The notes beneath the pieces are model-generated. The model had not been told where the DNA came from and did no database searches. It saw nothing but the letters and a program-made list of their open reading frames with translations. A DNA stretch of 63,787 bases, the filler included, from Octopus bimaculoides (taxonomy: Eukaryota), in NCBI RefSeq assembly GCF_001194135.2. It is 6 parts of 6 records of this genome, joined end to end, with 100 filler letters (N's around TTAATTAATTAA, not from the genome) between each part and the next. Parts side by side here need not be neighbours in the genome. Positions count along the whole stretch, not along the records: positions 18,568 to 38,838 come from NC_068983.1; 5 more parts are not named here. One strand, given 5' to 3'. The position numbers and the translations under genes are program-made. Position 1 is the stretch's first letter. The number at the start of each line of letters is the position of its first letter. Shown here one piece after another: positions 24,711-38,734 of the stretch.

Positions 24711-24856
24711 ATCAAACCATAAACACCCATTCCAGTTTCAAATAGATGGTGGAACAATGATTAAAGGATGGCAGCTTGGTTTAAAAGGTGCTTGTGTTGG
24801 TGAAACACGAAAGCTAACTATCCCTCCAAAATATGCTTTTGGTGAATATGGGAACC
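24711..24856 (+). CDS. FKBP14: ER FKBP-type PPIase (FKBP14/FKBP7-like), coding exon 2
   Basis: Acceptor tgtatttcag| and donor |gtaagt. Reads (S)SNHKHPFQFQIDGGTMIKGWQLGLKGACVGETRKLTIPPKYAFGEYGN(P), matching the FKBP core IKGW..G..G.C.GE.RKL.IPP..A.G. Enters in phase 2, exits in phase 1. FKBP14 versus FKBP7 cannot be resolved by eye. Confidence 0.92.
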
Positions 24857-25104
24857 GTAAGTATTTTCTTCTTTCATCAATTAATCTAATTTAAAAAAAG
24901 CGAAAATGTGATTTAGGTGTAACATCGAATTTCTTCTAGTATTTCCTTTATTGGACACTAAACTCTGCTTGTGAAGACCTGTTGGGGCAAGTGAAATCGA
25001 AATCGAAATTGAACCAAATTCGATGACTGGCACCTGTGCCAGTGGAGCGCTAACAGCACCATCTGAGTGTAACCATTGCCAGAGCAGCTGTCTGGCTTCC
25101 GTGA

Positions 25105-26234
25105 CGTACTAGAGAGATCAGTAGACTCATGCAGTGTATAAACAGAGCTTTCGGAAATTGAAGCTCCTCCAACTTGGTCTGGATCTGCTCTACCAAACCC
25201 TTCCTCACTTCTGCCATTTTTTTCACTCCATCAACTGTAACTCACTGAAGCTGATTCCATGGAAGGTTATAGTGTTGCAGAATTTTCTGCTCCTCTATGA
25301 AACTATCTTCTCCATTTGTTGTTCCATGTATACTGCAAGCAGATGCCATTTCTACTATAATCTCAAAGTTGCAATTAACACCACAAATGAACACAAGAAG
25401 TTGTGACGTACTAGAGAGAATACCACAAGATTTTTTTAACTGTCTCATGTATCTGTAACTGTATATTTTCTCCAAGTTCTTCTGTTCTCCACACAACTGA
25501 ACTTGCCGAAAGCTGATACAGCCAAACATGTCAGCTGTTTTCAGGACATAAGTTATTTACTGCTTCCATCTTTTATAAAGTTTTCATTAGTAAATAGGTT
25601 TCCTCACTCTGCCAACTTATTCACTATTTTGTAACTTACACGAGTGATAAATTCATTTTCAACAAACTTTTTCAGAAAGAAATTCCTTTGGGATTCCAAA
25701 CTACATTTCATAGATTCAAATTTCTTGGACTGCAACTTTCTAGAATATTTAGAATGTGTTGAGAGATGTTTTGCTTCATAGTGACAATGAATATTGTATT
25801 CTTTCATAACAGCAACACTTTCATTGCATATCTGGCAACTAGCTTTCTGGTCGTTTGTTTCCACAAAGAAGTAATTTTCTCTCCATTCTTTATTGAAAAT
25901 ATGACATTCATCATCAACCTTTCTCTTAGTAACCATAACAATGGGTGAAGAAAAAAACAAAAGCAGTCTTAGGCCTCAGAATCAGATATTCTCGTTTTAA
26001 TCACTAATAATTGACTAACCTGAAGCACACATGATGTACTGTAGTAATTATTATGGTGCATGAAATACATAGCACGTGACATGACTGACTCAGCATACAT
26101 ATAACATGTGTAATCTAAGAAGTGTAAGAAACATTATAAAAGCATGTTTATTTATTTCAGCATACAATGGCTGGCCAGACAAATTGACATAGCGGGCCGA
26201 ATCTGGCCTGCGCGCCATAGTTTGGTGACCTATG
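25105..26234 (-). mobile_element. hAT (Charlie/SPIN/GTF2IRD2-like) transposon 5' fragment in FKBP intron 2
   Basis: Terminal CATAGGTCACCAAACTATGGCGCGCAGGCCAGATTCGGCCCGC resembles Charlie TIRs. ORF KRKVDDECHIFNKEWRENYFFVE...CQICNESVAVMKEYNIHCHYEAKH is the characteristic zinc-finger N-terminus. Confidence 0.85.
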
Positions 26235-26271
26235 GTTTAGATCATGAGTGATTTAAATCCTTCATATTCTA

Positions 26272-26778
26272 TTGCAGGAGTGGCTGTGTGGCAGTAGCTT
26301 ACTTACTAACCACATGGTTCTGGGGATCAGTCCCACTGCATGGTACCTTGGGCAAATGTCTTCTACTATAGCCTCAGGCTGACCAAACCTTATGAGTGGA
26401 TTTGATAGACAGTAAATGAAAGAAGCCTGTTGTATATATATATATATGTGTGTGTGTGTGTGTGTGTGTGTGTGTGTGTGTGTGTGTGTGTGTGTGTGTG
26501 TGTGTGTGTGTGTGTGTGTGTGTGTGTGTGTGTGTGTGTGTGTGTGTGTGTGTGTGTTTGTGTGTGACTGTATTCGTTCCCCCCCCACACACACACACCA
26601 TCGCTTGACAGCTGATGCTGATGTGTTTACATCCCTGTAACTTAGCAGTTCGGCATAAGAACCCAATAAAATAAGTACTAGGCTTACAAAGAATAATTCA
26701 AGAGGTTGATTTCTTCAAATTAAAGGCAGTGCTCCAGCATGGCCACAGTCAAATGACTGAAACAAGTAAGAGAATAAA
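26272..26778 (+). mobile_element. SINE family B, full length, CpG-decayed (FKBP intron 2)
   Basis: Same architecture. Most CpG sites read TpG or CpA. Confidence 0.9.
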
Positions 26779-37100: not shown

Positions 37101-37754
37101 TCTTTTGCTTCCAAAACAATGTGGTACAGTTCTGGAATAATTTTGCAGTATTCAGGAATGGGGGAGGTGAGGACCGGCATAGGGATTCGTATATGCATAT
37201 AATTACACCAACACATTATTTCTGTCAGCTCTGCACTTATCTCTTGTGCCATAAATGTAATGATAAAGTGAAGATCAGTGTCTAAAACAATGGATTGATT
37301 GTACCCTTTGTGGTGTGCTTTCTCATACACTGCAGCATGAGGCAGCAGGCAAATGTGTGATGCACTACATCCACTCATCACTTAAATTTATCATTGATCT
37401 CAAAGACTGAATTCACACACCCATATGACTCTACCTTGGTTAATAGAGCAAACGTCATTTCACATACATTGGGCTGACCTTCCTTCAAGTGTGCCTTTGG
37501 AGGCCTAAGAAAGCCATCTCTGTATTTAGATGTATTTCTTGAACCAGAGGAGGGTACTATTATATTTCTTCCACTGTCTCTCCTCTTCTCAGATCTGGCC
37601 TATACAGGGTGATTTCTCTGATAAGTAATGCTAGCAAAACATTTACAATTGCATTTACTATTAATTTTATTTGAAATATTGATGCTTCTTTTTTGTTTTC
37701 ATTTCTGGAAGCATAAATATTTGCTGTGTCTGCTTGTTCAAGTATATTCACTTT

Positions 37755-38473
37755 TTCCCAATATCTGACAATGCAATGGAAGGAGAGAAACAACAAAAGG
37801 TTGAGTGAATGAATGGGATAATAATAATTGGCACAGAAAGAATACAAGAAATGACTTACTCATATAGTAAGTGAATGTAGCATGTTGGCACAGAAAGAAT
37901 ACAAGAAAAGACATGTCAACCAAGGGAGAGTAATCCACTGGGATTTATATAGAAAGCTAGGATTTGAATATACTGATAAATGGTATGAACATGAACCTAG
38001 TAAAGTACACGAAAGTAAGAAATATAAGATGTTGTTAGACTTTAACATTCAGACTGAGAGAGTAATAGAAGCTAGGAGGTCTGATTTAATAGTAGTAGAT
38101 AAACAGAATAAAAAGTGCCAGATGATTGACTTTACAGTCCCAAATGATGAGAAAAGCAAAATGAGAGGTAAAGAAAAAATAGCAAAGTACAAGAACCTAG
38201 CCATTGGACTATGGAAATGCGGGCAAAATATATCCCAGTAGTTATAGGTGCATTGGGAACTATCCCTAAATATTTGAACAGATGAATAGAGGAAATAGGC
38301 ATAAAACATAGTATATCTCCAGAAAACAATGTTATTAAGGACAGCTAGAATACTTAGAAGGGTTCTTGGCATCTAAGGTTACTTGTTGTGACTTGATATT
38401 AGGAATTTCTCTTTTCCAACAGTCTAATCTGTTGTGTGTCTATGAATAGTGATGATAATAATAATAATAATAA
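37755..38473 (+). mobile_element. R4/Dong-clade LINE, 5'-truncated (RLE domain, 3'UTR, (AAT)n tail)
   Basis: MLAQKEYKKRH...VIHWDLYRKLGF..KWYEHEP..V.E.KKYK.L.DFNIQT.RVIEARRSDLIVVDK..KC.MIDF.VPND...KEKIAKYKNL, then ..VIGALGTIPK and an (AAT)n tail. Confidence 0.9.
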
Positions 38474-38519
38474 AGCATTTATATGAGTTCTCTGTTTTTT
38501 GATCATTCTGCAGTTAAAA

Positions 38520-38734
38520 ATGAAGAGGTTACTACAAAACATTATTCTGCCACTTGCTTTCCTGTGCTTTTTGGTGACACTATGTTATTGTGAAGAAAAG
38601 GAAGAACCCCTTGAAGATGTGAAAATTGAAATATTAAAGGAATCTGAAAATTGTGAAAGAAAAGTGAAACGAGGGGACAAGTTAAAGGTGAATTATAAAG
38701 GATACTTGGAGAACGGAAAAATTTTTGATGATTC
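38520..38734 (+). CDS. FKBP14: FKBP14/FKBP7-like first coding exon (signal peptide plus N-terminal half of FKBP domain)
   Basis: MKRLLQNIILPLAFLCFLVTLCYCEEKEEPLEDVKIEILKESENCERKVKRGDKLKVNYKGYLENGKIFDD(S): hydrophobic signal peptide followed by the CERK.K.GD.L.V.Y.G.LE.GK.FD motif. Donor TC|gtaaga is phase 2. An acceptor (ttttttgatcattctgcag|, exon start 38514) precedes the ATG, implying an upstream 5'UTR exon. Confidence 0.9.

What the first reader, a model, noticed from the sequence alone, without database searches (positions are those of the whole stretch)
24711..38734. Circularly permuted FKBP14-like gene: exon order 2-3-4...1 on one strand
Seen: four + strand exons, each present once. The exon at 38520-38734 ends in phase 2 (TC|gt) and the exon at 24711 starts with the completing base (ag|A). 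Joining 38520-38734, 24711-24856, 27390-27520 and 28854-29003 gives one uninterrupted 213-aa protein (signal peptide, FKBP, 2 EF-hands, HVEL). I found no exon 1 in the sequenced 24.7 kb upstream and no exons 2-4 in the sequenced 25 kb downstream. Established: human FKBP14 has this architecture and about this length. Inference, most to least mundane: (a) two tandem paralogues whose other halves lie in gaps or beyond the linker joins; (b) a collapsed tandem array or mis-ordered contigs; (c) a truly scrambled locus needing trans-splicing or a circular intermediate. Phase compatibility does not discriminate, because paralogues conserve intron phase. The absence of an obvious CpG-retaining promoter between 29003 and 38514 counts mildly against (a).
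Basis: partly seen in the sequence, partly recalled or inferred. Interest (0 to 1): 0.8.

Follow-up and report, generated by a model that had tools for sequence, protein, structure and literature searches.

The report
Two tandem FKBP14 genes, cut window
The apparently scrambled gene is really the back three exons of one octopus FKBP14-like gene followed by the first coding exon of its tandem twin, whose remaining exons lie just past an assembly gap at the edge of the piece, so this is ordinary.

Summary
The four exons exist at the stated coordinates and join into an open 213-aa FKBP14-like protein. That join is a chimera of two genes.

- **Source.** The piece is byte-identical to Octopus bimaculoides chromosome CM046603.1:33,308,981-33,329,251. 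In that record it sits between a 2,428-N gap and a 5,980-N gap.
- **Exon at 38520-38734.** This is the first coding exon of the downstream gene B (XP_014781656.1, 213 aa). B's own exons 2-4 lie 8.9-11.6 kb further on, beyond the 5,980-N gap. Splicing them reproduces that protein exactly.
- **Exons at 24711, 27390 and 28854.** These are exons 2-4 of the upstream paralogue A (XP_014781655.2, a truncated model).
- **Other octopus.** The gapless O. vulgaris assembly has the same head-to-tail pair, each gene with its own exon 1. The whole piece is colinear with it across both internal gaps.
- **Why the join reads open.** All four genes share exon lengths 215/146/131/150, so any exon 1 joins any exon 2 in frame.
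- **What I could not see.** A's own exon 1 in O. bimaculoides was out of reach. Homology places it more than about 130 bp beyond the DNA I could fetch.

Options (b) and (c) are rejected.

The parts
18568..24710 (+). 3' 6.1 kb of intron 1 of gene A (upstream FKBP14-like paralogue). The piece starts directly after a 2,428-N assembly gap in the chromosome record.
   Evidence: Colinear with O. vulgaris gene A intron 1: window 18659-21421 ~ Ov 15348-18977 and 24093-24943 ~ Ov 19742-21041. Gap seen. No exon-1-like sequence here.
23779..23822 (+). Mini first exon (MTEGVTNAYIDRNK, AG|gt) used only by the superseded RefSeq model XP_014781655.1. Probably not a real coding exon.
   Evidence: It lies in 21421-24064, which has no O. 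vulgaris alignment of 120 bp or more. The resulting protein lacks the signal peptide and the first quarter of the FKBP domain.
24711..24856 (+). Gene A exon 2 (146 nt). The current RefSeq model XP_014781655.2 starts at an intronic ATG at 24700.
   Evidence: P0004 is 100% identical over exons 2-4.
27390..27520 (+). Gene A exon 3 (131 nt).
28185..28496 (.). 10-N gap flanked by an exact 151-bp duplicate, an unmerged contig overlap inside intron 3 of gene A.
   Evidence: O. vulgaris has a single copy.
28854..29003 (+). Gene A exon 4 with stop codon (150 nt, ...HVEL*).
29004..38513 (.). Intergenic spacer between gene A and the first coding exon of gene B. It is orthologous to the 12.2-kb A-B spacer of O. 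vulgaris.
   Evidence: Colinear blocks. Distal upstream sites are 30 B-type against 4 A-type.
31317..33020 (.). 99% inverted repeat (arms about 590 bp, about 390 bp between them) whose right arm contains the 195-N gap.
37158..37166 (+). 3' end of a conserved 5' leader exon of gene B (ATGGGGGAG|gt). It would splice in frame to the acceptor at 38513/38514.
   Evidence: About 95% identical to the annotated first exon of O. vulgaris gene A (ATGGAGGAG|gt, L003 10001-10009) and to its B copy. Use of this exon in O. bimaculoides is inferred.
38520..38734 (+). First coding exon (215 nt) of gene B, the downstream paralogue (XP_014781656.1 / A0A0L8GER2, 213 aa). It encodes the signal peptide and the start of the FKBP domain.
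   Evidence: Spliced with B exons at window-equivalent 47604-47749, 48567-48697 and 50179-50328, it gives P0001 exactly.
38735..38838 (+). First 104 bp of gene B intron 1. The piece ends at a 5,980-N assembly gap.

Best explanation
The piece holds parts of two ordinary, head-to-tail tandem paralogues of an ER-type FKBP14-like prolyl isomerase in Octopus bimaculoides.

Shown:
- Exons at 24711, 27390 and 28854 are exons 2-4 of the upstream gene A.
- The exon at 38520 is the first coding exon of the downstream gene B. B's own exons 2-4 lie 8.9-11.6 kb further on, behind a 5,980-N assembly gap that forms the piece's right edge.
- The 2-3-4...1 order is what results when a window is cut from inside intron 1 of A to the start of intron 1 of B.
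- The chimeric join reads open because the paralogues keep identical exon lengths and phases.

Inferred:
- Gene A has its own exon 1 upstream of the piece.
- Each gene is transcribed and spliced conventionally into a secreted or ER-retained FKBP with two EF-hands.
For: - The piece is byte-identical to GCA_001194135.2 CM046603.1:33,308,981-33,329,251 and is bounded there by gaps of 2,428 N and 5,980 N.
- Exon 38520-38734 plus the downstream exons at merged 32905-33050, 33868-33998 and 35480-35629 translates exactly to the annotated P0001 / XP_014781656.1.
- P0004 / XP_014781655.2 covers exons 2-4 at 100% identity.
- In the gapless O. vulgaris locus the order is A1-A2-A3-A4, a 12.2-kb spacer, then B1-B2-B3-B4. 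Intron 1 is 8.4 kb in A and 8.8 kb in B.
- The whole piece is colinear with Ov from A intron 1 to B intron 1, across both internal gaps.
- Exons 3-4 group by orthology: ObB-OvB 95% against 81-91% for A-B pairs. So A and B predate the split of the two species.
- The contig after the 195-N gap is B-type at its distal end, 30 sites to 4. It also holds segments (35509-36736) that match only the Ov B-upstream region.
- DNA upstream of the 2,428-N gap (L001 79-1329) matches the start of Ov gene A intron 1 (Ov 12536-13762, 88%). This places A's exon 1 just beyond the fetched DNA.
Against: - Gene A's exon 1 was not seen in O. bimaculoides. Two successive RefSeq models of A are 5'-truncated and use improvised starts. 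The exon may sit in yet another gap, or may be absent.
- The exon at 38520 is slightly closer to Ov A1 (93.0%) than to Ov B1 (90.7%). I attribute this to gene conversion in the 5' half, since exon 2 groups by species. Taken alone, it would also fit a misplaced contig.
- No transcript data were available.
Confidence: 0.9

Rival explanations
1. Gene A of O. bimaculoides has truly lost its first coding exon. It would be a 5'-truncated paralogue: a pseudogene in the making, or expressed from an improvised start without a signal peptide.
For: - No exon 1 lies in the 6.1 kb upstream of exon 2 or in L001 1-1440.
- Both RefSeq versions of the A model lack it.
- A evolves about twice as fast as B between species (dS 0.21 against 0.10, dN 0.105 against 0.054).
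Against: - The start of A intron 1 is present upstream in the right order and orientation (L001 79-1329 ~ Ov 12536-13762). The exon's expected position is simply outside the fetched DNA.
- Exons 2-4 keep an open frame, canonical splice sites and dN/dS near 0.5.
- The O. vulgaris orthologue is complete.
- This assembly has 713,915 contigs, so missing exons are common (PMC10700109).
Confidence: 0.06
2. Mis-ordered contigs. The contig 32868-38838 really belongs upstream of 18568, so the exon at 38520 is A's exon 1, and the scaffolder misplaced it through a repeat.
For: - The 195-N gap lies inside a repeat arm.
- Exon 1 and its proximal flank are slightly closer to the Ov A copy.
- The assembly lacks an A exon 1 in the DNA I could read.
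Against: - Both flanks of the gap are colinear with Ov (36441-37175 | 37262-38051). They are also colinear, at the same 99% identity, with the single other arm of the inverted repeat.
- Distal upstream sites are 30 B-type against 4 A-type.
- Window 35509-36736 matches only the Ov B-upstream region.
- A separate copy of the intron-1 start already sits upstream of gene A (L001 79-1329).
- Under this reading B's exons 2-4 would be left without an exon 1, yet the annotated B model is complete.
Confidence: 0.03
3. A truly scrambled or circularly permuted gene that makes one mRNA by trans-splicing or back-splicing, or a collapsed tandem array.
For: Only the phase-compatible open reading frame of the joined exons.
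Against: - Phase compatibility is shared by all paralogues.
- The exon has its own downstream partners, which reproduce an annotated protein exactly.
- A and B exons 2-4 differ by 5-15% and each has its own O. vulgaris orthologue, so nothing is collapsed.
- Exon 4 of A is a terminal exon with a stop codon and no donor site.
Confidence: 0.01

Closest known systems
Human FKBP14 (FKBP22), ER-resident FKBP with two EF-hands (PDB 4msp)
   Same: - N-terminal hydrophobic leader, one FKBP_C domain, an EF-hand pair and a C-terminal H-x-E-L tail.
- About 210 aa.
- Alignment over residues 30-212 of gene B's protein (P0001) with E 1.5e-34.
   Different: - The tail is HVEL rather than HDEL (the human motif is from my own knowledge).
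- It is present as a tandem pair in Octopus.
- RefSeq names one copy 'FK506-binding protein 2' and the other 'FKBP14'.
O. vulgaris tandem pair on OX597816.1 (P0002 = A orthologue, P0003 = B orthologue)
   Same: Same order, orientation, exon lengths (215/146/131/150) and phases. Introns and spacer are colinear with the window.
   Different: - It is gapless, so all eight exons are visible.
- Intron 2 of A is 8.2 kb against 2.5 kb here.
- About 1.2 kb of the spacer is inverted relative to the window.
Annotated O. bimaculoides genes XP_014781655.2 (A) and XP_014781656.1 / XP_052822787.1 / A0A0L8GER2 (B)
   Same: These are the very genes in the window.
   Different: The A model is truncated. It starts at an intronic ATG at window 24700 and lacks the signal-peptide exon.

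Membership tests
FKBP14-type ER FKBP (FKBP domain + EF-hand pair + ER retention tail) | FKBP-type PPIase domain | tested here: met
   PF00254 full length (profile positions 1-94 of 94). E 2e-30 for the B protein and for the chimeric join. Gene A exons 2-4 alone cover profile positions 25-94.
FKBP14-type ER FKBP (FKBP domain + EF-hand pair + ER retention tail) | C-terminal pair of EF-hands | tested here: met
   PF13499 EF-hand_7 at 148-205. It scores 33-35 bits for A-type sequence (cut-off 30) and 27.6 bits for B, just under the cut-off. B's protein (P0001) aligns through this region to human FKBP14 4msp.
FKBP14-type ER FKBP (FKBP domain + EF-hand pair + ER retention tail) | Cleavable signal peptide and H/K-D-E-L-type retention tail | tested here: inconclusive
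   A hydrophobic leader MKRLLQNIILPLAFLCFLVTLCYC and the tail HVEL are seen by eye in the translation. No signal-peptide predictor was available and retention was not tested.
Ordinary tandem gene duplicates | Each copy has its own full exon set in canonical order on one strand | tested here: met
   Met for O. vulgaris A and B and for O. bimaculoides B. For O. bimaculoides A, exons 2-4 were seen but exon 1 was not visible in the DNA I could fetch.
Scrambled / circularly permuted gene needing trans- or back-splicing | Exon 1 has no colinear downstream exons 2-4 of its own | tested here: not met
   B exons 2-4 lie 8.9-11.6 kb downstream and splice to the annotated protein exactly.
Scrambled / circularly permuted gene needing trans- or back-splicing | Transcripts that join the downstream exon 1 to the upstream exon 2 | not testable with these tools
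   No RNA-seq or cDNA data were reachable. The protein search returned no transcript-derived octopus sequences.

The most novel reading that the evidence does not exclude
In O. bimaculoides the upstream paralogue A has really lost its signal-peptide exon. Its exons 2-4 stay open, so it would be a truncated FKBP-EF-hand protein without a signal peptide, made from an improvised first exon. It would sit in a locus that is structurally unstable, with concerted evolution of the 5' halves and an A/B hybrid single gene in the O. sinensis assembly.
Probability: 0.06. Interest if true: 0.2.

Novelty: already known. Interest (0 to 1): 0.05.

Why it matters
It matters mainly as a caution.

- A window cut between two tandem paralogues, in an assembly full of gaps, imitates a permuted gene.
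- Conserved intron phases make the false join read perfectly.
All three exon 1 copies that could be read end in the same ...TGATGATTC, so normal A1-to-A2 splicing would produce the same junction sequence.

Biologically this is a routine duplicated FKBP14-like gene pair in Octopus, already annotated.

Tried and rejected
- **Second exon 1 in the piece.** I looked for one in 18568-24710 and in the 1.4 kb beyond the upstream gap, using tblastn at E up to 100 and 10. None was found.
- **A's exon 1 inside the 2,428-N gap.** I rejected this. The DNA upstream of that gap already matches Ov intron 1 from 172 bp after the exon, so the exon lies further upstream.
- **Reaching that exon.** The largest flank (10 kb) stops inside a (TG)n microsatellite more than about 130 bp short of it. 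No other tool reads eukaryotic chromosomes by coordinate.
- **Transcript-derived proteins.** I hoped the protein search would return them to test the splice junctions. It returned only genome-annotation models.
- **Mis-scaffolding through the inverted repeat at the 195-N gap.** I rejected this on colinearity with O. vulgaris, equal 99% identity of both arm pieces, and B-type diagnostic sites.
- **Collapsed tandem array.** I rejected this because A and B exons 2-4 are distinct and each has its own orthologue.
- **Argonauta hians.** I checked whether it has the pair. Only one copy lies within ±10 kb, so the age of the duplication beyond Octopus stays open.
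Full report
**Observation.** All have canonical ag/gt borders. Joined in the order proposed they give 642 nt, a 213-aa open frame ending HVEL*. Each exon occurs once in the piece, and no second exon-1-like sequence exists in 18568-24710. The product has a full FKBP_C domain and an EF-hand pair. 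The exact B protein (P0001) aligns over nearly its whole length with human FKBP14, PDB 4msp (E 1.5e-34). So the sequence-level observation holds. The statements about 24.7 kb of upstream and 25 kb of downstream sequence do not hold. Only 6.1 kb upstream of exon 2 and 104 bp downstream of exon 1 belong to this genome piece.

**Where the piece comes from.** A protein search gave an Octopus bimaculoides protein identical to exons 2-4 (P0004, 145 aa, XP_014781655.2, named FKBP14). It also gave a full-length 213-aa O. bimaculoides protein whose first 72 residues are identical to the exon at 38520 but whose remainder differs (P0001, XP_014781656.1 / A0A0L8GER2, named FK506-binding protein 2). Both are encoded on chromosome CM046603.1 of GCA_001194135.2, 9.5 kb apart on the same strand. 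The piece is byte-identical to CM046603.1:33,308,981-33,329,251. In that record it is bounded by a 2,428-N gap on the left and a 5,980-N gap on the right.

**What the exons are.** Downstream of the 5,980-N gap lie three more exons, at window-equivalent 47604-47749, 48567-48697 and 50179-50328. Spliced to 38520-38734, they reproduce P0001 exactly. The exon at 38520 is therefore the first coding exon of the downstream gene B. The exons at 24711, 27390 and 28854 are exons 2-4 of the upstream gene A. The 'permutation' is produced by cutting the window from inside intron 1 of A to the first 104 bp of intron 1 of B.

**Independent check in a gapless assembly.** O. vulgaris (GCA_951406725.2, OX597816.1; an ONT-based assembly of 2,758 contigs, against 713,915 contigs for O. 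bimaculoides; PMC10700109) has no N in the 68.5 kb I fetched. There the order is A1-A2-A3-A4, a 12.2-kb spacer, then B1-B2-B3-B4. Intron 1 is 8.4 kb in A and 8.8 kb in B. All four genes have exon lengths 215/146/131/150 with the same phases. That is why B1 joined to A2 reads open.

**Gaps, tested as requested.** Neither gap lies in a reading frame.
- The 10-N gap (28336-28345) is in intron 3 of A. It is flanked by an exact 151-bp direct duplicate. Both flanks map to one overlapping stretch of O. vulgaris (Ov 29572-30341 and 30213-31904). This is an unmerged contig overlap, and the join is sound.
- The 195-N gap (32673-32867) is intergenic and lies inside one arm of a 99% inverted repeat (31317-31469 / 32868-33020 and 31536-31906 / 32302-32672). 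That made a mis-scaffold worth testing.
- Three results speak against a mis-scaffold. First, the flanks are colinear with O. vulgaris (Ov 36441-37175 | 37262-38051), so only about 86 bp are missing. Second, both arm pieces match the single other arm at the same 99% identity.
- Third, the contig after the gap is B-type. At sites where the O. vulgaris A-upstream and B-upstream copies differ, it carries the B base 30:4 in its distal 600 bp and 79:51 overall. It also contains segments (35509-36736) that match only the B-upstream region.

**Where A's exon 1 is.** It is not in the 2,428-N gap. The 1.4 kb upstream of that gap (L001 79-1329) matches O. vulgaris gene A intron 1 from 172 bp after its exon 1 (Ov 12536-13762, 88%). 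L001 begins inside a (TG)n microsatellite that in O. vulgaris lies about 130-220 bp into intron 1. So the exon should lie more than about 130 bp beyond the limit of the 10-kb flank, and I could not read it. Both RefSeq versions of the A model are 5'-truncated. The current one starts at an intronic ATG at 24700. The earlier one uses a 44-nt mini-exon at 23779-23822, inside sequence that has no O. vulgaris counterpart. The exon may therefore sit in a further gap. True loss of the exon is a minor alternative, which I put at about 6%. Exons 2-4 of A stay open, with dN/dS about 0.5 against the O. vulgaris orthologue.

**Evolution of the pair.**
- Exons 3 and 4 group by orthology: ObB-OvB 95%, against 81-91% for A-B pairs.
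- Exon 2 groups by species: ObA-ObB 94.5% and OvA-OvB 95.9%, against 88-92% for orthologues.
- Exon 1 is a mosaic.

The duplication therefore predates the split of O. bimaculoides and O. vulgaris, about 34 My ago according to PMC10700109. The 5' halves have been homogenised by gene conversion. This explains why the exon at 38520 is marginally closer to Ov A1 (93.0%) than to Ov B1 (90.7%).

**Promoter remark.** A conserved leader exon ending ATGGGGGAG|gt at 37158-37166 lies 1.35 kb upstream of the coding exon. It is about 95% identical to the annotated first exon of O. vulgaris gene A and to the equivalent B sequence. It would splice in frame to the acceptor six bases before the ATG at 38520. 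The region upstream of 38520 thus looks like the 5' end of an ordinary gene.

**Verdict.** This is an ordinary, already annotated tandem pair of FKBP14-like genes. The permuted order is an artefact of the piece's boundaries in a very fragmented assembly. A short RNA-seq read across ...TTTGATGATTC|ATCAAACC... would also be produced by normal A1-to-A2 splicing, because every exon 1 copy I could read ends in the same bases. Such reads would not support a scrambled gene.

Noticed in passing
L005 (O. sinensis GCA_006345805.1 CM016861.1), about 8715-8892: The O. sinensis assembly has only one gene at this locus. Diagnostic sites switch cleanly from O. vulgaris A-upstream type (157 sites) to B-upstream type (115 sites) inside the duplicated promoter block, and no A exons are present. 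This is either an unequal-crossover deletion of gene A or a collapse of the tandem pair in that assembly.
   Followed up: partly
window 24711-24856 and 38520-38734, with L002, L003 and L004 counterparts: The 5' half of the pair evolves in concert. Exon 2 is more alike within a species (94.5-95.9%) than between orthologues (88-92%), and exon 1 is a mosaic of A-type and B-type sites. Exons 3-4 follow orthology.
   Followed up: partly
window 31317-33020: A near-perfect (99%) inverted repeat with arms of about 590 bp, a spacer of about 390 bp, and the 195-N gap inside the right arm. O. vulgaris has only the right-arm orientation at this place. The left arm is therefore either a very recent inverted duplication or an assembly artefact.
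   Followed up: partly
window 28185-28496: An exact 151-bp duplicate lies on both sides of the 10-N gap. This is the signature of two contig ends that overlap but were not merged, so intron 3 is about 161 bp shorter than written.
   Followed up: yes
window 35509-36736: About 1.2 kb of the A-B spacer is inverted relative to O. vulgaris (Ov 40280-38711). It could be a small inversion between the species or a local assembly error.
   Followed up: no
window 24700 and 23779-23822: Both RefSeq models of gene A are 5'-truncated. XP_014781655.2 starts at an ATG inside intron 1. XP_014781655.1 used a 44-nt mini-exon in sequence without an O. vulgaris counterpart. Neither has a signal peptide or a full FKBP domain.
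   Followed up: yes
window 37158-37166 and acceptor at 38513/38514: A conserved leader exon (ATGGGGGAG|gt) would add five in-frame residues (MGELK) ahead of the usual start, as in the O. vulgaris model P0002 (MEEIK...). The flanking 140 bp are about 95% conserved against about 88-90% nearby.
   Followed up: partly
window 25604-25960 (- strand): A 118-aa ORF in intron 2 of gene A matches the Spin-doc zinc finger (PF18658, E 8e-7). It is probably a fragment of a transposon-derived gene.
   Followed up: no
window 26273-26780, also 31899-32075: A SINE-like element of about 200-500 bp next to a (TG)60 microsatellite (26447-26566) has more than ten copies, in both orientations, in the O. vulgaris locus.
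   Followed up: no
L006 (Argonauta hians BAAFZT010000015.1): There is a single FKBP14-like gene with exons in normal order, and no second copy within 10 kb on either side. The tandem duplication may be confined to the Octopus lineage.
   Followed up: partly
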